Counted from the first letter of the stretch, positions 5,031 to 41,121 are shown. The stretch is 64,000 bases of DNA from Podarcis muralis (GCF_964188315.1 NC_135667.1:20150001-20214000); one strand, 5' to 3'. The notes: generated from the letters alone by a model not told the origin. Made by a program: numbers and translations.

Positions 5031-6894
5031 GTTCCCACCTCTACCCTACAGCAACTGGAAATTTTGGAGAGAGCCTGGCCTAGCCTTTGCATATCTCACT
5101 ACTGCAGGGCAGTCGGGGGGAAGCAAGCACAATGGGAATGCTCAGGCCAGGGGGCAGGAGGAACATCAGCTGCACTGGATCGGAGCTACAGGAAGCAGGA
5201 CTGTACCTATCTCAGGGGAGGTGGAAGAGAGAGATAGAGAGACAGAACAGATTGAAGAGAGATGGGGAGGGAGGGAAAGAAGGAGACGCCGTCTGTCTGT
5301 CGGGCTTAAGAAGCCGAAAGCCAGGAATTTAATCAATGTCTGGGGACTGGCAGGAGGCGATGACGCAGAGCGAGGCTTCGTCAGTATGGATTCAGCTAGC
5401 TGGCCTAATCCAGCACAATGGCTGAGCCGTGGCTCTCTCCCCCTGCCTAGCAGTCCGGCGAAAAGGGGAGTGAGATTTTGTGTGTACGCACAATGGGCCG
5501 AGATATATATTTTGTGCGTGTGCATTTTTGAAATATCAGATTGAGGTTATGCAAGGTCATGCAATACATTTACTTTCAAATTACTTGGTTAGCCCACGGT
5601 TAAAGGTTAAGGAACTTTACGCATCGCAGTTTAACTCTCCCACCCCTTGTCAGGAGTAGACCTCAGATTTCCCCACCAGGCAAGGATGGGATATTTGACC
5701 CCATGTTGCCATCTAGTGTTTAGCTTGAGAGTTACATCTTTTCCCTGGATTTATTTTGGCAAGACTGGTCACACGCCACAAATGGTTGTTACAGGGTAAG
5801 GTTGCCAACTGACTAGAAAAGCAATAGCAGATCTAGACAGGCCTGCTCACGTGCTTTTACCAGCAGACTGGAGGTGCTGCAATCAGCTGGTGAGACTTCT
5901 CACATCATGGATATAAGCCATATCGCCTGATGTCAACAAATCAAGCTTATTTCAGAGAAACTGCCATGGCAGCTGATGGCAGCATAAGCAACGAAGTCTT
6001 GGGGCACCTTAAAGAATGCATTTGATCAGGCTACTGTGAAAGAGACAGCTGCAGCAGCTAGTTAAAAAGTTGGCAGCCCTATTCCTAAAGATTGGAAGCT
6101 TCCCCCTATCAATGCATGAAGTTCAGGAGGCTAGAGTACCTTTAAGCATGTGCAGAGTGCACTTACCAAAAGCACTTCCCAAAAGCCAGTCTCTATGCTT
6201 TCAAGGTTTGGACAGGGATTTGGTTTTTTTTTTAAATTTATTTAGAAAGTGAAGCTTCCTGTTTGGGTTTCCATGTCTCTATTTATTTAAAATATTCCCA
6301 CCTTTCCATACATATTCTCAAATTGACTTACAACACCTCGCATTAAAAACACGTATCACATAATTTTTTTAGGGGGGGGAAATGCAATGAAATATAACTG
6401 GCAGCATTCAAAACCAGCTATGCAGATGAGGATCCACTACTGTGAGAATGCCAACCTCACTTCCAAAAGTGGGGGCACCTGGAGATACGCTGTGCTCTAT
6501 AGCACATGTGGGCAAACTTCAGGATTGCAAGATCTGCTTTGTGTTTGCTTTACTAGGAAGCTGAGCTCCACCAATCAGAGCAAGGAGCAAAGTAGTGACT
6601 TGAGGTGTGGGGTGGAGATGGAGTCAACTACTTCCTGCACCCGTAACCCATGCAGGGGAAGAATATATCAAAAATTCCAAGCAGCATCTGCATTTCTACA
6701 GATCAGGACTTCTAAAAAAAAAAAAAATCTATATTTGGGAAAGGGGTGGATTTTTTCTCATCACTTTTTTGGGGAGCCAATCTACCGCAAATTCTCCAGC
6801 AGCAGCCTATCAGTAAATAGGCTGTCCTACCTTCTGCCTAACCCTGGCCTAGAGAATTCAGGAGTGGGGAGAGGGATTTGCACGTAGCCCATAT

Positions 6895-23291: not shown

Positions 23292-25003
23292 AGATATTCC
23301 CTGACAAAACCCAGAGTCTGCTCTTCCCCACACCTTCTCCTCTCTTAATCCACCAGGTCCTTTTAAATGTATGGTCCTATGCTCTCAGCAGCCTGTTCCA
23401 GATATACCTCATATCGAGATATTGAGATATCTGTAGATAGGAAGCAGCCGTGAATTAAGCTGCTGTTATTAGACCCTGTATTCCCCCAGAAACAGAAGGT
23501 CCTGCCTCTTTCCACAGCAAATGCAAAGGATTGAAATATGGGTTCTGCTTGTGGGCCCATGGCATAAATTGAGGAGCATGGCTGGATCTCTTCAGTTTTG
23601 GGAATATAGAACTGCTGCTTCCATTCTGGCAGTTCAGCAGGCCTGCTAAAATCGAAGTTCTTCTTGGTGGGAAGAAGTTTGCCGTTTTAGGCCTTGCTCT
23701 TTTACTATACAAAGAATCCCGGGAACTGCGGTTTGTTAAGGGTTCTGGGAACTGCAGCTTTGTGAAGGGTAAACTGAGGTACCTAGGATTATTTGGGGGA
23801 AGTCAGGTGCTTTAGAAGCATGGTGCGTCCATCTTCCTTCTCCTTTTCTTCTGGTAGCCTGTTATTAAACAATCCTGGTTAGATGGCTGCTGATGGAAGC
23901 TATTTTGGGAGAGGAGAAGCCAAATGGCAGTTGGTTTCAGCTAGGCCCATATGGGGAAGCCTGAGAGGACACTTCTGGAGAAGGTTTCATCTAGCCTGAC
24001 TGATGAAGTAGGTCTTTCCTCTCCCTCAGACACAGCCAAGTAGAATTGCGGGTGATGGAGACAGTCCTGGAAGAGGAACCCCAAACAACAATCGCTTTCA
24101 ACCAGGCTGGTGGAGCAGACCTCAATGAATATGTACATACCTTCCAACATCCGAACAGCAAAAACTGGGACGCCATCTTCCCATTTTTTGTCACAAGTGG
24201 ACAGTGACCATGTGATCACTGCGCGATTTCACACTGCAAACCCCACCCCCAATGCTTTTTTCAGACCAAAAGCGTGTGTTTTGTGGTGCCACGCAAGATC
24301 GCGACCCTGAAAAAAGCATTCTTTTTCCAGGGGAAATTACAGCACGAAATCATGCAAGATCATGGCACCCAAAATGGCTGCCATTCTCTCGCAAGAAAAA
24401 ATGGGATGTCCCAGTTTTTCCGGGACACTTGTGAGGTATGTGTGCATCTCAGCAGCACTATTGCCTCTTGCCAACACCATGGAAATGGTGGATCTAATGA
24501 CGAATACCAAAGGCCATGTTTGGCTCATGCCTGCACTCCAACTTGAGTTTGATGCACAGTCCCTTCTCAAGAGTTGCTGTGGCCCAGGATGCACTTCTTC
24601 CACCGCCCAACGGAGTGGCCCGTCTCCTTGCCCTACCCTCAGTCACATCAACTGCAACTTGTTTGTGTGCCTATTAGCGAGCCTTGTGTTAATGAGGCCC
24701 GGAGGGAAGTGAGACCACCCAGCCGCCCACCCTCCATCGACAACCAAGCGGTGAGTCACGCCATAGTGTGGGAGCAGGTTTCATTAGCGGTGGTTCTGAA
24801 TGAGACCTTCCAAGTGGGGTCAAGGGGATCCGATAGTGTTTGCTCTGATAATGAGAAGAACACAAGCTGCCTAATTTCCCTGTCTTGTTAACATTCACAT
24901 CATCTCCATAGACACACACTTCCGTTTGCTCCTTGACTTCTAGGCACAAGTTCAAAAGGTTTTCAGCGGGACAAAAGAAAACCTCTTGAACCTGTGCATA
25001 GAA

Positions 25004-26616
25004 CAGTGTTTCCCAACCGGTGTTCCGCGGCACACTAGTGTGCCGCGAGACGTTGCCTGGTGTGCCATGGGAGGGAGGCGGGCGAGTCGGGCGGCGAGAG
25101 GCGGGGCGGAGGCGGCGAGGAGAGGCCGCGCAGCGCGGGGCTCTCACCGTCTGCCTGCCTGGGTGCCTGCGTGGCGCTGACGTCACGGGGCTGTAACGTG
25201 CCCCACATAGGCACACGCGGGGCGGCGAACGAGCTCCCTCCCACATCCCATCGCCGGCTCTGCACCAGGCGGTAGAGCTCGGCGAAGTCGCCGCGCTGGA
25301 AGGCCAGCAGCGCGCGCGCCTTGGCCAGGCTCTCGCCCGCCTGCGCCTCCAGGCACGGCGCCTCGGCGTCGGGCGGCAGCGAGCCCAGGAAGCGGCCCAG
25401 CCGGCCGGGGTCGCCCGCCTGCAGCAGCGCCTCGCACCCGCACGAGACCTGCTCCGCCGAGAAGCGCGGCGAGCGCGGAGGATCGGGCGCGGCGGAGGCC
25501 AGCCCCGCGCTTGGAGAGGACGCAGCAGCCGTCGCCAAACCCGATCCTCCTCCTCCTGCTCCGCCGCCGTCCTCTGGCTCTCGGCCGGGAGGAGCCTGCG
25601 GTGACGGGGCGGGCGCCGAAGTTGGCAGAAGTTGGCGCACCTCCTCGGCAGCGCCTTCGTCCTCCTCCTCCTGCCTCTGCTCTCCTCCGGCGGCGGGGGC
25701 GCGCGGCCCTCCCCGGCCGGGGGGCTCGGCGGGGCCCGCGGGGAAGGAGGCCATGTTCGCGGCACGCGGGATCGCGGCCCCCCTCGCCCGCCTCCGGCCT
25801 GCTCCTCTCCCCCTGCGCGCTGCCCTAGCCGTGCGGGTCTCTTCCCCCTGCGCCGCCGTCCCCTTTCCACATCCTAGGAGCCGCGGTCCGCCTACCGCCC
25901 CCGGGCTGCGGCGCGGCTCCCAGCCCGGGCTGGCCTCCGCCTCCTGGGACGCGCGCCCACCCCCGCGGCCCCCCAAACTTCGGAGCAACTCTCCAGACGC
26001 TTCTCCCCCGCCTCGGTCTCCCTCCTTTCCACTTCTCTTCCCCCCTTCCTTCCCTCTTTCTTTCTCTTTCTCTCCCACCCGCCTTTCCTTCTATTAACTT
26101 TCCTTTCCCCTCCCTTCGTCCTTCCTACTTTTACTCCTGGGCTCCTCCCCCCTTTGTGCAGCCACAAATCAATCTCTCTCTCTTTTTTCCCCTCTCTCTC
26201 TTCTTTGCTCAGACGCAAAAAAGCGCCGCTTTTTGGAAATCCGGACTGCTGTCCCCGCTGAAACGATACTTTAAAAAAGGAAGAACCCACTGGCTCTTAT
26301 TTCTGTTTAAAGCAGTAGATCCCGAACTCTTTTGGCCCACTGCCCCCTTGGTTCCACATCCCCCAGTGTCCCCTATGCTTACTCTATAGAAAGCATTACA
26401 GGGGTTAACGCGGCTCGCTAAGGAAGATATTAATAGAATTCTGCATTTGGGGGGAGACCCTAACAGTCATCTACCATTACCTTCTATGCTGTTACTATTT
26501 TTTTATTTTTTTACATAAGTAAAAAGTGACCTTTCCCCATCTGGCATGGTGGTGTGCCTCGAGATTTTTTTCATGAAACAAGTGTGCCTTTGCCCAAAAA
26601 AGGTTGGGAAACACTG
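25004..26616. mobile_element. Pack-hAT: non-autonomous hAT transposon carrying captured host gene sequence
   Basis: Perfect 15-bp TIRs CAGTGTTTCCCAACC (25004-25018) and GGTTGGGAAACACTG (26602-26616); identical 8-bp TSD GCATAGAA at 24996-25003 and 26617-26624; no transposase; interior holds a SIX5 exon-1 fragment. Confidence 0.9.
25253..25754 (-). pseudogene. SIX5: Captured 3'-truncated SIX5 exon 1 (N-terminus plus first part of the SIX domain; no homeodomain)
   Basis: MASFPAGPAEPP...EEVRQLL...RFSAEQVSCGCEALLQAGDPGRLGRFLGSLPP...KARALLAFQRGDFAELYRLVQSR matches SIX5 (FSPEQVACVCEALLQAGHAGRLSRFLGALPP...RARALVAFQRGEYAELYRLLESR). Homology stops abruptly; the frame stays open to a TAG at 25035-25037 in the transposon end. 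No WDGEET or NWFKNRR motif was found in the window. Confidence 0.85.
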
Positions 26617-26883
26617 GCATAGAAGTCCCGGACCAAATGAAAGAAATTGTAGGGAAAGGGAAGTGTGGATGAGCCCCCCACACACACACAAACACACCAC
26701 AAATGCATATTAAACCTGCAATTTTTTTGCACCAAAAATTCCACTCTGTCTGTGCCTATGGACTTTTAACATCAATGTGTTCTCACCAAAGTCTCCCCAC
26801 TACCCCCCACAATACTTTTCCATCCTTCTGTTTAGTTCCATCATCTTTAATCACCCATCCTTTATTTCTCTCAGTCACACTTT

Positions 26884-27363: not shown

Positions 27364-30300
27364 ATGGAAGCAGCGTTTGGAGCCTGCAAAAGTCCCAGGG
27401 CCACCTTAGTCATTCTCAGTTCTTGCTTGCTGCTGTCTTCAGGGGCTGTGGTGCACAACTCAGGCAGGTAAGTTGAAGGGGTTTTTCTTTGTGTGGGGTT
27501 TTTTACCTGACCACCTTTTCCATCGGTCATTCTAGATCACACAAGCCATTTTCCATCTGAACCAGATTTACAGTGGACAAGATTGGGCAGGGTTGGCAGG
27601 TGTGTGTGTGTGTGCATTTAAAGTTTAGTAACATGACCAAAGTCTTGCAAAAGAGAATGTGGCAGAGAAGGGGATTGGGAAAGGAAAGGAGAAAGTTCTT
27701 CACCCAGAATAGTTTTTAAGAATATGTTGGTCAGGGGCAGCCAACACAGTGCCGTCCAGATGCAGCCAGTGTAGCGTCGTCCCATCAGCCCCAGTCAATG
27801 TGAGCAATGGTCAGGGATGATGGGAGTTGTAGTTGGACAACATCTTGGTGGAACCAAGTTGACTATCCCAATATAGGTAGTGGGATAAATCGGGGGAACA
27901 CCTTTTTGGGAACCTCCTCTCTCACTTTTTCAACAGCTGGTTGCTTCCTTCTCTTCCGAAAGAAGCCAGGCTGGGGAAAGAAGACATTAATACTGACTCT
28001 TTATCCTTTTTGGGGGAGAAGAGGCAGCAAGAAGGTGCAAAGGGAGAAGTTTGACGTTGCAGGAGCGGGGAAAGAGGGGCTGGGCTGGGAAGGGTTAAGC
28101 AGAATGTGGATGGAGCAGGGGCTTTGTTTCAAAGTATAATGAGAGGTTCTAGAGTTGGAAAGATTTGGGGCTCTTCCAGACTGTCGCTATTTTCAGGTGA
28201 GATTCACTCACATACCCGCAGACTCGTGTCTCACAATTACAATTGATTGGGAGTCCTTGCACAAGAAACCCCGTACCCAAAAGATCAGACGTTTTGCAGT
28301 AAGGAAAGTGGCAGGAAAATGCACCGGGAAGGGGGGGGCGGCACTTGCATTGACACAACTGCCATGTGACCAACCCGCAAACAGCTCAGAATGACGGTTC
28401 ATAGTCAAGGTTGTCCAATCTCCCTGCAGGCAAACCAGGATGAACAAACAGGTTGTCTGGAAGAAGTGCTCAAATAATCCACAATTCTATTATTGATTTA
28501 AGAACTAGCTCCACCATTTTTGTCCGTAATTTGCTCATGGAATTCTTCAACATGAATTCCAATGTAATGGCCAATTTCTTAGTCATGTGGGGCCTGCAAC
28601 AAAACGTTGCAGTGTTTGTGGAGTGCTTCTATTCAAGATTCGAGGCCATCTTCTCCACCACCAACACCCCATATTTTCATTTCCCACACTCAACTGCTTC
28701 TCAGTATTTCGTAGCCACACTGAGCATGCTCAGTCCTTGGGCTGTTTTTAAGGTTCCCTTCTCCTTAGGTTTGTTCCCCCCTTAAAGTAGTTTTCGGACT
28801 TGTGCAAACTTTGCAGTTTCCTTGAGTCCACAATAGCTCCCTCTTCTGCCGAGGCGGTGCTTTTTTTTTTTTTTGTCTAAATAAACAATGAAACTCATAG
28901 CCTGGACATAAGTAATGGAGGGAATGACAGTTTTGAAGAAGAGAGCTGAAAAGGCACAGAGAACAGGGGCCTCTTCAGACTGGTGCTTTATTGCGGGTGT
29001 ATTCTGCAATATGTTCCTGACACAATCATAACGTGTCAGTAGTGGGTTTATTCTTCATGCTTTATTTGTCATTCAACGCTTCCTTGATGCTACGACATTA
29101 TTGCTTTCTGAAGGGGCTAAAGCACGACAAAAGCAGGACAAAAATAAACCAGAATGTTTGGCGTAAAGAAAGTTATGGGATCCCAGCAACAGGATACGGG
29201 ATTATTACTGATTGTAGACAAAGCAGTATATGACTGCCCCAAAACTTTTGCAGGCACACTGAATGGAAAGCGGAACCATGCATGGCCAACCTTATTGCCT
29301 CGTGAGTACTTCAGTGAGAATGCACAATGAAACAGATGTCTGGAGGGGCCCAAAGTCTATCAAATGTCTAGTTGAACAGTTGAACAGAACAGGGAATTGC
29401 CGTATTTTTCGCTCTATAAGACGCATCAGACCACAAGATGCACCTAGTTTTTGGAGGAGGAAAACAAGAAAAAAAATATTCTGAATCTCAGAAGCCAGAA
29501 CAGCAACAGGGATCGCTGTGCAGTGAAAACAGCAATCCCTCTTGCTGTTCTGGCTTCTGGGATAGCTGTGCAGCCTGCATTCGCTCCATAAGACGTGGGA
29601 AGGGAAAAAGTGAGTCTTATAGAGCAAAACATATGGTAATAACAGGGAATGACTGTCCCCCCCCCCTTGCCTCTCTTGAGAGCATCCCGGAGGCATCTGC
29701 CTGGTAGGGACAGAATGCTGTAGGCAGACACTGAGCCGGCAATGCCCCCCCCCCCCCCCGAATCTGAACTCTCCCCTCAAGGGACCTTACTGGTGGAGGT
29801 GGCTCCTAGGTGTCTTCCAGCAGGCTTGAGACTATGGGTTTCTTACTCCACTTCCTGCCTATTAATTAAGCTTCCATTATTTCCCACGAACTAACAGCCG
29901 CCAGGTTACAGTATATCAAATTACTAGCGCAGGATTGGGGAACCCGCAGAGCTCACGTTTGAAGCAATGCAGCTCCCTTCAGCGCCAGCCAGCAGGGCCA
30001 ATGGTCAGGGGCAGCAGGAGTTAAAAGCACCCAACTCCCCTCTCATCAAAGAACTGTAGTTTGTGAAGGGTGCTGGGAATTGTAGCTGTGTGAGGGATGA
30101 ACTGCAGCTGCCGGGACTCTTTGGGTGGGTGCGCTGTAAATGTATTCTGTATACGCAGCCTAAATATATTTAGTCTTTTTTAAGGCGCCCAAAGGCTTGT
30201 TTTTGCTGCAACTGGCTAACACAGGTGGCTTTCTGGAGATTGCATATTGTGTGGGCAAGACCTTAGGGAGATCCATACTTGTTCTGTGCTTCCTTCAGAA

Positions 30301-30795
30301 GGCAATATGGGGACTCCTCCTCGGTTCCAATCTACTTGATCCCTCCTCTGGAGAACTCAGGTTTCCTATACTTTTTCTCCCAGCAGGCTCTGGAGACGTG
30401 AAGTGTCCCAGTATCCTCCAGCAGGGAGCAGCGTTGACCTCAAAGGAGCCCCTGTTCCCTGGAGCCTCCGCATCCCATCCACTACCTTGCATGACTGGAT
30501 GCTCAAGTGGATGTCCTCAGATGTCACCGCCCCCTGGGCTGAGGACAATGAAGAGGAAGGGCGAAACAGGAAGTCCCGCCTGTGGGGCCCAATGAGACAG
30601 GAAGCTCCGTCTCCTAGGGGCCAGAAGGTGGCGCTGTACCAAGCCAGCTGGGTTCCAGGTTGGGGCGGGAAGCGAAGTATTGTGCTAGCGGATGATGCCG
30701 CCTTCAGGGAGAAAAGCAAGATGCTGACAGCCATGGAGAGGCAGAAATGGCTCAACTCCTACATGCAAAAGCTTTTGGTGGTGAACTCTGAGTAG
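27364..30795 (+). CDS. PTH2: Parathyroid hormone 2 / TIP39 precursor, 170 aa
   Basis: Exon 27364-27467 (signal peptide MEAAFGACKSPRATLVILSSCLLLSSGAVV, AG|gtaagt) joins exon 30387-30795 in frame. After KR comes a 39-aa peptide SIVLADDAAFREKSKMLTAMERQKWLNSYMQKLLVVNSE (30676-30792), clearly TIP39. Confidence 0.96.
29400..29636. mobile_element. Tc1/mariner (Tigger/pogo-like) MITE in the PTH2 intron
   Basis: TIR CCGTATTTTTCGCTCTATAAGAC / GTCTTATAGAGCAAAACATATGG; near-identical body at 46127-46384. Confidence 0.75.
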
Positions 30796-34027: not shown

Positions 34028-34910
34028 TGATACGGAAGGAACAGGGGGGGGGGGTACCCATCCTTCCCTACCGCTCCCTGAAGGGGTCCGAGGCGATGGC
34101 CCCTGCAGTGCCCAGCCGGCCTCGAACCCTCAGCCCCCGCACCATTGCATAGGCACCACACTGTACCCCTGCCTTGTAAATAAAAGGCTCTCTTTCCTGT
34201 CTTCACGCGGGCGGAATAAGCCCCATCTTTCCTATGCCTTTCTCTCGCCCTATTCCTAACGTGAGTCTGGAAAGCATTGAAACCTTTAGAAATTGATATA
34301 AAATCAACCACAACTCCGATTTTCTCCATCCTGGTGACATTCAACTCAGTTGCCTCTGGACTCCATGTTGCTACCCCTACCTCCATAATCTTCAAGACGA
34401 CAAGTCACGTACACAGGAACTTCTTAATCCTGTCAGATCCTCCTGCCTAACCCTTCCTCCGGGCAATACCAGGTGGCAGACGATGCATATCACTGTCCCA
34501 TTGTCCTGCCACCACCGGTACTCAAGAAATGTTTATTTATGTATATCCCTCACTCTGCACATTCCCCCCTCCCTTGTCTTAAATGTTAATCAGTGTAACC
34601 CCACCTCTCTGTAAACATATTCATGACGTGTGTAATATATTCATGATGTAATCCATGAAACCCAACCTTCCCAAAATGTATTCATGACGTTTCGTGCACT
34701 GTATTCTGGGACTTGGAGGGAACTTTTAAAAGTCTATGTCGCCCCATTCTCGGGGTTCAATCTCGCCTTGAACCTGTTGCGCAATAAACTTGGATCTTCT
34801 ACAGTTTGCTCCTGCGTCCGGCTGAGCTCATTTTCTTCCGCAGGGACCCACGGACTTAGTCCGATGAGCTGGGTGGCAGAGCAGCCTCGCACCCAGATTT
34901 TGCCGTAACA
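34028..34910 (+). repeat. 5' LTR
   Basis: TGATACGGAAGG...GCCGTAACA; no difference from the 3' LTR found by eye. Confidence 0.95.
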
Positions 34911-40238: not shown

Positions 40239-41121
40239 TGATACGGAAGGAACAGGGGGGGGGGGTACCCATCCTTCCCTACCGCTCCCTGAAGGGGTCC
40301 GAGGCGATGGCCCCTGCAGTGCCCAGCCGGCCTCGAACCCTCAGCCCCCGCACCATTGCATAGGCACCACACTGTACCCCTGCCTTGTAAATAAAAGGCT
40401 CTCTTTCCTGTCTTCACGCGGGCGGAATAAGCCCCATCTTTCCTATGCCTTTCTCTCGCCCTATTCCTAACGTGAGTCTGGAAAGCATTGAAACCTTTAG
40501 AAATTGATATAAAATCAACCACAACTCCGATTTTCTCCATCCTGGTGACATTCAACTCAGTTGCCTCTGGACTCCATGTTGCTACCCCTACCTCCATAAT
40601 CTTCAAGACGACAAGTCACGTACACAGGAACTTCTTAATCCTGTCAGATCCTCCTGCCTAACCCTTCCTCCGGGCAATACCAGGTGGCAGACGATGCATA
40701 TCACTGTCCCATTGTCCTGCCACCACCGGTACTCAAGAAATGTTTATTTATGTATATCCCTCACTCTGCACATTCCCCCCTCCCTTGTCTTAAATGTTAA
40801 TCAGTGTAACCCCACCTCTCTGTAAACATATTCATGACGTGTGTAATATATTCATGATGTAATCCATGAAACCCAACCTTCCCAAAATGTATTCATGACG
40901 TTTCGTGCACTGTATTCTGGGACTTGGAGGGAACTTTTAAAAGTCTATGTCGCCCCATTCTCGGGGTTCAATCTCGCCTTGAACCTGTTGCGCAATAAAC
41001 TTGGATCTTCTACAGTTTGCTCCTGCGTCCGGCTGAGCTCATTTTCTTCCGCAGGGACCCACGGACTTAGTCCGATGAGCTGGGTGGCAGAGCAGCCTCG
41101 CACCCAGATTTTGCCGTAACA
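40239..41121 (+). repeat. 3' LTR
   Basis: Same length and sequence as 34028-34910; the ORF-track translations of the two copies are identical. Confidence 0.95.

What the first reader, a model, noticed from the sequence alone, without database searches (positions are those of the whole stretch)
25004..26616. Pack-hAT transposon that captured and moved the 5' end of the homeobox gene SIX5
Seen in sequence: perfect 15-bp TIRs (CAGTGTTTCCCAACC), an identical 8-bp TSD (GCATAGAA) and no transposase. The interior holds about 1 kb of SIX5 5' region, ATG and first part of the SIX domain, cut off just after YRLVQSR. Established: 8-bp TSDs and CAG-starting TIRs define hAT elements; gene-fragment capture by TIR elements is common in plants (Pack-MULE, Pack-CACTA) and much rarer in vertebrates. 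Inference: the whole unit inserted here in one event, so what an annotator would call SIX5 is a mobilised developmental transcription-factor fragment. Human SIX5 and PTH2/GFY are both on 19q13, so the donor may be on the same chromosome.
Basis: partly seen in the sequence, partly recalled or inferred. Interest (0 to 1): 0.92.

Follow-up and report, generated by a model that had tools for sequence, protein, structure and literature searches.

The report
hAT transposon carrying SIX5 gene start
A 1.6-kb cut-and-paste transposon in the common wall lizard carries the promoter region and first 167 codons of the developmental gene SIX5, sits at roughly 30-130 places in the genome, and landed at this spot so recently that four related lizards still show the empty site.

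Summary
Window 25004-26616 has perfect 15-bp inverted ends (CAGTGTTTCCCAACC) and an 8-bp target duplication (GCATAGAA). It holds no transposase.

- **Anatomy:** two transposon arms (249 and 143 bp) enclose one unbroken 1,221-bp piece (25253-26473, minus strand). That piece is collinear with the SIX5 locus: about 0.72 kb upstream of the ATG plus 167 codons, cut inside the SIX domain.
- **Genome:** the window is Podarcis muralis. Its full-length SIX5 (929 aa) lies on a different chromosome record.
- **Empty sites:** Podarcis raffonei, P. lilfordi, Lacerta agilis and Zootoca vivipara have the uninterrupted site with one copy of the 8-mer.
- **Copy number:** in an independent P. muralis DNA run, contigs of the captured piece, including the arm/SIX5 junction, have 33-134 times the depth of the unique flanks. 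A UniProt protein encodes a second copy with a different flank.
- **Activity:** the copies look nearly silent, and this copy shows CpG decay.
the captured piece is longer than stated. The donor is not on the same chromosome. The immediate source was probably another loaded copy.
- **Unexplained:** the captured piece is closer to P. lilfordi SIX5 (2.0%) than to the resident gene (3.9%).

The scan found this kind before on other DNA of this genome: a second SIX5 copy (s1-188830), and PPAT and RANBP9 elements (s1-175883, s1-175884).

The parts
24996..25003 (.). Left copy of the 8-bp target-site duplication, GCATAGAA
   Evidence: A single copy is present at the empty orthologous sites of four relatives.
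25004..25018 (+). Left terminal inverted repeat, CAGTGTTTCCCAACC (begins with the hAT-type YARNG motif, CAGTG)
25004..25252 (+). Left transposon arm (249 bp). It has a 22-bp palindrome at 25026-25047, GTGTGCC subterminal repeats, and a GC-rich inner part shared with many other family variants.
   Evidence: It has no homology to the SIX5 loci. Word depth is 4e3 to 1.4e5 against 8-16 in the flanks. Variant elements diverge at 25131, 25174, 25195 and 25256. Heptamers. Palindrome.
25253..26473 (-). Captured host DNA: one contiguous 1,221-bp piece of the SIX5 locus (upstream/5'UTR CpG island plus the start of exon 1)
   Evidence: blastn matches: P. muralis SIX5 locus L007 5272-6505 at 93.3%; P. raffonei L001 5276-6517 at 93.2%; P. 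lilfordi L008 3888-5117 at 96.4%. CpG observed/expected is 0.92 and GC is 67%.
25253..25754 (-). SIX5 coding fragment: the ATG (25752-25754) to codon 167, ending inside the SIX domain after YRLVQSR
   Evidence: The real SIX5 proteins continue with PFGAPHH.
25755..26473 (-). 719 bp of SIX5 upstream sequence (promoter and/or 5'UTR; transcription start not determined)
   Evidence: It is collinear with the DNA upstream of the ATG in three Podarcis SIX5 loci.
25035..25754 (-). Chimeric 239-codon ORF: SIX5 residues 1-167 fused to 72 codons read from the left arm. Probably meaningless.
   Evidence: The second known copy (P0001) is out of frame over the first ~20 codons and again in the tail, so the frame is not conserved between copies.
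26474..26616 (+). Right transposon arm (143 bp) with GTGTGCC subterminal repeats at 26552 and 26582
   Evidence: It has no homology to the SIX5 loci. Depth is 1.8e4 to 2e5. Other variants join at 26473 and 26546. Heptamers.
26602..26616 (-). Right terminal inverted repeat
26617..26624 (.). Right copy of the target-site duplication, GCATAGAA

Best explanation
[quoted passage not shown] The element's original interior was replaced by a single 1.2-kb piece of genomic DNA from the 5' end of SIX5: upstream CpG island, ATG and 167 codons. The replacement most likely arose by template switching during double-strand-gap repair or replication at a transposon copy. That step is inferred from the sharp junctions and a 4-bp microhomology (GCCG) at one of them. 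The loaded element kept both ends and the subterminal GTGTGCC repeats. A transposase supplied in trans (partner not identified) could therefore move it, and it multiplied to roughly 30-130 copies. This copy then inserted, as a whole unit, into the intergenic DNA 748 bp upstream of the PTH2 gene model, in the P. muralis lineage, and made the 8-bp duplication. It has no sign of function. The SIX domain is cut at 70 of 113 profile positions and there is no homeodomain. The reading frame is not conserved between copies. RNA coverage is very low. This copy has lost CpGs in the way methylated DNA does.
For: Shown:
- Ends and duplication.
- Five of the nine GTGTGCC heptamers in the 64-kb window lie within 65 bp of the two ends.
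- The interior is collinear with three Podarcis SIX5 loci over 1,221 bp, and homology stops abruptly at 25253 and 26473.
- A full-length SIX5 sits on another chromosome record.
- Precise empty sites exist in P. raffonei, P. lilfordi, Lacerta agilis and Zootoca vivipara.
- In the independent DNA run X2, unique flank contigs have depth 8-16 and run 19 and 23 nt into the ends. Interior contigs have depth 526 (25230-25382, spanning the arm/SIX5 junction with 0 differences), 1713, 924 and 1711.
- A second copy is UniProt A0A670I980 (P0001). It has the same SIX5/arm junction, a translated transposon end and a different flank.
- At 25275, 4 of 6 RNA reads carry the letter of the real gene, not the element's.
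- Of 6 private differences in the captured part of this copy, 5 are CpG transitions (and direct reading).

Inferred:
- The capture mechanism, and the 4-bp microhomology. The latter rests on progenitor-type contigs that keep matching to 25256 while SIX5 homology ends at 25253.
- Trans-mobilisation.
Against: - No autonomous partner or transposase was seen.
- The copy number rests on contig word depth in one run, not on counted loci.
- The flank contigs enter the ends by fewer than the 31 nt that the tool asks for to call a bridge.
- The hAT target consensus nTnnnnAn is only half met: A at position 7, but C rather than T at position 2.
- The captured piece differs by 3.9% from the resident SIX5. 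That is more than expected for a recent capture from this very allele.
Confidence: 0.9

Rival explanations
1. Foreign origin of the loaded element. The capture happened in a lineage nearer to P. lilfordi (Western-Islands or Iberian side of the genus), and the family reached P. muralis by hybridisation/introgression or by horizontal transposon transfer. This refines the origin and is not a rival to the anatomy.
For: - The family-majority sequence differs from P. lilfordi SIX5 by 24/1218 (2.0%). It differs from the resident P. muralis SIX5 by 47/1210 (3.9%) and from P. raffonei by 46/1214.
- There are 14 informative sites for (element, lilfordi) against 1 and 0 for the other groupings, plus 9 shared gap columns.
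- The ML internal branch is 0.013 with support 100.
- Pervasive introgression in Podarcis is documented (PMC8114931).
Against: - The tree is unrooted.
- The two coding sites that could be polarised with the Zootoca protein (Ser at 25604, Ala at 25534) show the element/lilfordi state as ancestral. The grouping may therefore partly be shared ancestral states plus a fast muralis+raffonei branch.
- P. muralis carries at least two rather different SIX5 alleles (P0169 against P0401), and only one was compared as DNA.
Confidence: 0.3
2. A single-copy, transposition-independent 'gap-filling' Pack-TIR: an old hAT relic at this site was broken and patched in place with SIX5 DNA. This is the commonest origin of animal Pack-TIRs according to PMC8277862.
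For: It is the majority mechanism in the published animal survey. The junctions are sharp, with microhomology, as in that model.
Against: Four relatives have no element at all at the site, only one copy of the 8-mer. The same junction sequence is present at about 33 times flank depth in an independent individual. A second copy has a different flank. The donor is on another chromosome, against that model's cis bias.
Confidence: 0.03
3. Assembly artefact: a SIX5 CpG-island read joined to a repeat in the wrong place.
For: GC-rich (76%) repeated sequence is hard to assemble. L006 is the same assembly as the window, so its 100% identity is not independent.
Against: Contigs of a different individual from a different study leave both unique flanks and enter the transposon ends at exactly 25004 and 26616. 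The perfect duplication matches the single 8-mer of the relatives. The chimeric junction is multicopy.
Confidence: 0.02
4. A processed retrocopy or ordinary segmental duplicate of SIX5 that happens to lie between chance inverted repeats.
For: None beyond the presence of SIX5 sequence.
Against: The fragment includes 719 bp upstream of the ATG, stops inside exon 1 and has no poly(A). It is bounded by high-copy transposon arms that begin exactly where SIX5 homology stops.
Confidence: 0.01

Closest known systems
Multicopy Pack-hAT-N8_XT of Xenopus tropicalis (CAPSL 5'UTR fragment), from the animal Pack-TIR survey of Tan et al. 2021 (PMC8277862)
   Same: A non-autonomous hAT with inverted ends and distinct 8-bp duplications. 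It carries a 5' gene fragment, its copies lie on other chromosomes than the parent gene, and it is absent from the orthologous sites of a relative.
   Different: The frog element carries 291 bp and has three copies. This one carries 1,221 bp, including a CpG-island upstream region and 167 codons, at an estimated 30-130 copies. In that survey only 4 of 370 animal Pack-TIRs were multicopy.
Pack-MULEs of rice and other plant Pack-TYPE elements (PMC5861414, PMC8903248)
   Same: Non-autonomous elements with inverted ends that pick up GC-rich 5' parts of genes and amplify them. They are mostly non-functional and epigenetically silenced.
   Different: They belong to a different superfamily (Mutator, 9-11 bp duplications) and a different kingdom. 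No small-RNA or translation data exist here.
Anolis carolinensis hobo-type hAT elements with 'filler' DNA (Novick et al. 2011, PMC3014272)
   Same: Lizard hAT elements whose interiors are variably replaced by extraneous DNA.
   Different: There the filler is described as often being other transposons. Capture of a host promoter and first exon is not reported in that paper's text.
hAT2_NA MITEs of Manduca sexta, Bombyx mori and Rhodnius prolixus (Zhang et al. 2013, PMC3845634)
   Same: The printed terminal sequence of the Manduca family (CAGTGTTTCCCAAC) equals the first 14 nt of this element's end, and the duplication is 8 bp.
   Different: Only the 14-nt end was compared. The hosts are insects. 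Relatedness beyond the end, or horizontal transfer, was not tested.

Membership tests
hAT superfamily (non-autonomous member) | 8-bp target-site duplication | tested here: met
   GCATAGAA lies on both sides. It is single at the empty sites of four relatives.
hAT superfamily (non-autonomous member) | Short terminal inverted repeats beginning with YARNG | tested here: met
   The 15/15 inverted ends start with CAGTG. The same 14-nt end is printed for a published hAT MITE.
hAT superfamily (non-autonomous member) | Target consensus nTnnnnAn | tested here: inconclusive
   In GCATAGAA, position 7 is A and position 2 is C. One site cannot decide.
hAT superfamily (non-autonomous member) | Autonomous partner encoding a hAT transposase (DDE fold with hAT C-terminal dimerisation domain) and the same ends | not testable with these tools
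   No lizard genome search is available. The arms occur nowhere else in the window or in the eight fetched loci.
Pack-TIR / Pack-hAT (gene-fragment-carrying transposon) | Host, non-transposon sequence between intact ends, with no transposase | tested here: met
   1,221 bp are collinear with the SIX5 locus between arms of 249 and 143 bp.
Pack-TIR / Pack-hAT (gene-fragment-carrying transposon) | An identifiable parental gene elsewhere in the genome | tested here: met
   Full-length SIX5 (929 aa) is on OZ076960.1, a different record from the window's OZ076966.1.
Pack-TIR / Pack-hAT (gene-fragment-carrying transposon) | Mobilised after loading (several copies with the same internal junctions at different sites) | tested here: met
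   The junction contig has 33 times flank depth and other interior contigs 58-134 times. P0001 has the same junction and another flank. The number of loci was not counted directly.
Processed retrocopy | Starts at the transcription start, spliced, poly(A) tail, L1-type duplication | tested here: not met
   It ends inside exon 1, has no poly(A), and is bounded by inverted ends.

The most novel reading that the evidence does not exclude
The SIX5 piece was not taken from the resident P. muralis gene lineage but from a P. lilfordi-like lineage. If so, a loaded transposon family carried a host promoter and first exon across a species boundary, by introgression or true horizontal transfer, and then amplified in its new genome. 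Together with the other loaded hAT families that the scan notes in this genome, this would make wall lizards a vertebrate counterpart of the rice Pack-MULE system.
Probability: 0.25. Interest if true: 0.8.

Novelty: new member of a known kind. Interest (0 to 1): 0.62.

Why it matters
Gene-fragment capture by cut-and-paste transposons is a major source of new gene structures in plants. In vertebrates the published survey found almost only single, immobile cases. Here a vertebrate hAT element has taken a whole CpG-island 5' end of a developmental transcription-factor gene and spread it to tens or about a hundred sites. It did so recently enough that empty sites, a second copy and the parent gene can all be lined up base by base.

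That gives a clean natural experiment on three questions:
- How such captures arise: the junctions and a microhomology are preserved.
- What happens to a CpG-island promoter once it is scattered around a genome: this copy shows methylation-type CpG decay and near silence.
- How annotation is misled: one copy already sits in UniProt as a 'SIX1 SD domain-containing protein'.

The insertion also puts a foreign 1.2-kb CpG island 0.75 kb upstream of PTH2.

Tried and rejected
- The look-up of encoding contigs found nothing for the second-copy protein P0001, the UniProt P. muralis SIX5 (P0169) or Zootoca SIX5 (P0172). So no DNA of a second copy and no lacertid outgroup could be had, and the tree stays unrooted.
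- The notebook search by sequence was blank.
- The exact end sequence and both arms were sought in the window and the eight fetched loci, about 230 kb in all, and found only here.
- Literature searches for loaded hAT elements in Podarcis or lacertids found no description.
- RNA contig run X16 was said to hold 66% of the element's words, but its laid contigs covered only the arms. The tool warns that a filter drops records, so I drew no conclusion about transcription from it.
- tblastn with real SIX5 proteins extended weakly past the breakpoint (to 25185-25227). DNA alignment shows that homology really stops at 25253, so that extension is a low-complexity artefact.
- I considered spending the last contig look-up on Rhineura SIX5 as an outgroup. 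I rejected it because only one of the 14 informative sites lies in alignable coding sequence.

Full report
**1. The observation**

The sequence shows CAGTGTTTCCCAACC at 25004-25018 and its exact reverse complement at 26602-26616. Each is abutted on the outside by GCATAGAA, at 24996-25003 and 26617-26624. The 15-mer has no other exact match in the 64-kb window. A second perfect 15-nt inverted repeat lies inside the GC-rich interior (I11), so the inverted repeat alone is weak evidence. The combination with an adjoining identical 8-mer is not: I estimate about 3e-6 expected per window under uniform composition (own arithmetic).

The heptamer GTGTGCC occurs nine times in the window. Five of those lie within 65 bp of the two ends. 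This is the pattern of subterminal transposase-binding repeats in hAT elements (established knowledge).

**2. What the interior is**

Read on the minus strand from the ATG at 25754, the sequence gives a SIX5-type N-terminus and the first 70 of 113 positions of the SIX1_SD profile (PF16878, E 9.6e-13). Real lacertid SIX5 proteins are nearly identical up to YRLVQSR and then continue with PFGAPHH, whereas the window reads RWDVGG.

At the DNA level, window 26473-25253 is collinear with the SIX5 loci of three Podarcis species:
- P. muralis L007 5272-6505, 93.3%;
- P. raffonei L001 5276-6517, 93.2%;
- P. lilfordi L008 3888-5117, 96.4%.

In the two RefSeq-annotated loci (L007, L001) the SIX5 ATG is at locus position 6001. 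The piece therefore covers about 0.72 kb upstream of the ATG plus 502 nt of coding sequence. It is genomic and unspliced, and it stops abruptly at both ends. What remains is a left arm of 249 bp and a right arm of 143 bp, too short for any transposase. tblastn with full-length SIX5 proteins finds no other SIX5 exon in the window.

**3. Which genome, and where the parent gene is**

A locus fetched through the PTH2 protein of Podarcis muralis (GCA_964188315.1, OZ076966.1) is 100% identical to the window across both flanks and the element. The window is therefore P. muralis.

The same assembly has a full-length SIX5 (XP_028597956.2, 929 aa, with SIX domain and homeodomain) on OZ076960.1. The parent gene exists, it is complete, and it lies on another chromosome record.

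**4. Proof of insertion as a unit**

In P. raffonei, P. lilfordi, Lacerta agilis and Zootoca vivipara the left and right flanks are directly adjacent. In the first three species the two flank alignments overlap by exactly eight bases. All four carry a single copy of the 8-mer: GCATAGAA in P. raffonei, GCGTAGAA in the others. None of these loci has any part of the element.

The insertion is therefore specific to the P. muralis lineage and created the duplication. It lies in intergenic DNA, 748 bp upstream of the annotated start of PTH2. The PTH2 gene model corresponds to window 27364-30795 on the plus strand.

**5. It is a family, not a one-off**

*A second copy.* A protein search with the chimeric ORF returned UniProt A0A670I980 of P. 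muralis (P0001). It is 97% identical and contains the same SIX5/arm junction. It then reads through the transposon end (…GTPVGKHW) into a different flank.

*Depth in an independent individual.* Contigs of DNA run X2 show the following.

| Region | Contig word depth |
|---|---|
| Unique flanks | 8-16 |
| 25230-25382 (spans the arm/SIX5 junction, 0 differences) | 526 |
| 25510-25669 | 1713 |
| 25913-26037 | 924 |
| 26084-26502 | 1711 |
| Outer arms (bin sums) | 1.4e5 to 2e5 |

The interior depths are 33-134 times the flank depth. The arm depths mean that thousands of short relatives share the ends. The commonest of these is a form of about 260 bp that joins 25195 to 26546. That form is also present in RNA contigs of a second species label. 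Other variants leave the arms at 25131, 25174, 25256, 26473 and 26546.

*Junction support.* The flank contigs of X2 enter the ends at exactly 25004 and 26616, by 19 and 23 nt. That is short of the tool's 31-nt rule but independent of the assembly. No empty-site contig was seen in X2.

*Earlier notes.* The scan's notes list another SIX5-loaded copy in an ITGA8 intron (s1-188830, not checked by me). Two copies noted in about 3% of the genome scanned fits a total of several tens.

**6. How the capture probably happened (inferred)**

Contigs of progenitor-type elements keep matching the left arm up to 25256 and then continue with unrelated transposon sequence. SIX5 homology reaches 25253. The two therefore overlap in GCCG, a 4-bp microhomology. 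At the other junction the overlap is at most 1 bp.

The features are one contiguous filler, sharp junctions, microhomology and retention of both ends. They fit template switching during repair of an excision gap, or the replication-fork model (FoSTeST) proposed for multicopy animal Pack-TIRs (PMC8277862). I cannot tell these apart.

**7. State of the copies**

*RNA coverage.* In raw RNA-seq run X23 (about 12% of the run read), the interior has 0-8 reads per position on both strands, while the ends have about 100. At 25275, where the element and the resident gene differ, 4 of 6 reads carry the resident gene's letter. All loaded copies together thus give less signal there than the single real gene.

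*Reading frame.* The frame is not conserved. P0001 is out of frame over the first ~20 codons and again in the tail. Both copies carry Gly for the otherwise invariant Val in SCVCE.

*CpG decay.* The family-majority sequence still looks like a CpG island: 125 CpGs, observed/expected 0.95. Only 2 of its 11 private changes are CpG transitions. This copy differs from the majority at 6 positions of the captured part, and 5 of them are CpG to TpG or CpA (contexts read). In the whole element, 7 of 12 private differences are of that kind. That is the signature of germline methylation after insertion.

*Age.* With 0.5% divergence from the majority, mostly at CpGs, the insertion is perhaps 1-5 million years old. 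This is a rough figure, because the rate is assumed from general knowledge.

**8. An unexplained twist**

The captured piece is not closest to the resident gene. Distances of the family majority are 2.0% to P. lilfordi, 3.9% to P. muralis and 3.8% to P. raffonei SIX5. The three genes differ from each other by 3.4-3.95%.

Fourteen informative sites and nine gap columns group the element with P. lilfordi, against 1 and 0 sites for the alternatives. ML support for that split is 100. Under a clock, the donor allele split from the P. lilfordi lineage at about half the depth of the P. muralis/P. lilfordi split. That split is dated 18-20 Mya in PMC10214862.

Podarcis has pervasive ancient introgression (PMC8114931). 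An introgressed transposon family, an introgressed SIX5 allele or horizontal transfer are therefore all possible.

Cautions:
- The tree is unrooted.
- The two sites I could polarise with the Zootoca protein show the element/lilfordi state as ancestral.
- P. muralis itself has two rather different SIX5 alleles in its two assemblies.

**9. Comparison with what is known**

Pack-TIRs are documented in animals: 370 in 100 genomes, 208 of them hAT. Only four were multicopy, with three copies shown for the one frog example that is described, and the median insert was 224 bp (PMC8277862). Anolis hobo-type hATs are known to take up filler DNA (PMC3014272). I found no paper describing loaded hAT families in lacertids.

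The thing is therefore a new member of a known kind. It is unusual for the size of its cargo, a whole CpG-island 5' end of a homeobox gene, and for its amplification.

The scan has met the same kind on other DNA of this genome: PPAT and RANBP9 elements with follow-ups, and SPR and CRPPA notes. If those hold, the real finding is a genome-wide habit of this transposon family, of which this is one clean, fully documented case.

**10. Verdict**

- Confidence in the anatomy and in insertion by transposition is 0.9.
- The copy number is approximate.
- The origin of the captured allele is unresolved.

Noticed in passing
window 25004-25017, compared with the table in PMC3845634: The first 14 nt of the end are identical to the terminal sequence printed for the insect hAT2_NA MITE of Manduca sexta. 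The Bombyx, Rhodnius and Heliconius versions differ by one base. That family was discussed in the context of horizontal transfer.
   Followed up: partly
L007 (P. muralis SIX5, new assembly) versus protein P0169 (older assembly): The two P. muralis SIX5 N-termini differ at several residues and indels (for example GLAT against GLET, and PPPQ against PPPPQ). The species therefore carries quite divergent SIX5 5' haplotypes.
   Followed up: partly
L008 / protein P0400 (P. lilfordi SIX5, 1013 aa): The P. lilfordi gene model has a ~100-residue N-terminal extension translated from the GC-rich 5' region, and a frame error in the low-complexity part. It is probably an annotation artefact.
   Followed up: no
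UniProt A0A670I980 (P0001): A database protein named 'Homeobox protein SIX1 N-terminal SD domain-containing protein' is in fact a read-through of another copy of this transposon, including its translated end and flanking DNA.
   Followed up: yes
window 27364-30795 (+): This is the PTH2 (TIP39) gene. Its last exon ORF, 30403-30795, is 89% identical to Lacerta agilis PTH2. The loaded transposon puts a 1.2-kb CpG island 748 bp upstream of the gene model, pointing away from it.
   Followed up: partly
window 34591-34605 and 40802-40816: An identical 15-mer (CAGTGTAACCCCACC) occurs twice, 6.2 kb apart, inside the stretch that another note calls a young ERV with identical LTRs. This is consistent with that note.
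   Followed up: no
window 25070-25252: The inner, GC-rich part of the left arm contains TGACGTCA at 25181-25188. It is shared by many family variants at about 1e3-5e3 times flank depth, and it may itself be an older captured promoter piece, as the RANBP9 follow-up suggested for its element.
   Followed up: no
window 26473 / L001 5262-5283: The distal breakpoint in the SIX5 upstream region falls inside a motif (…GGGTTAGAC|TAGATGACC…) that I recall from squamate SINE tails. The outermost cargo may therefore be an old SINE remnant of the SIX5 upstream region.
   Followed up: no
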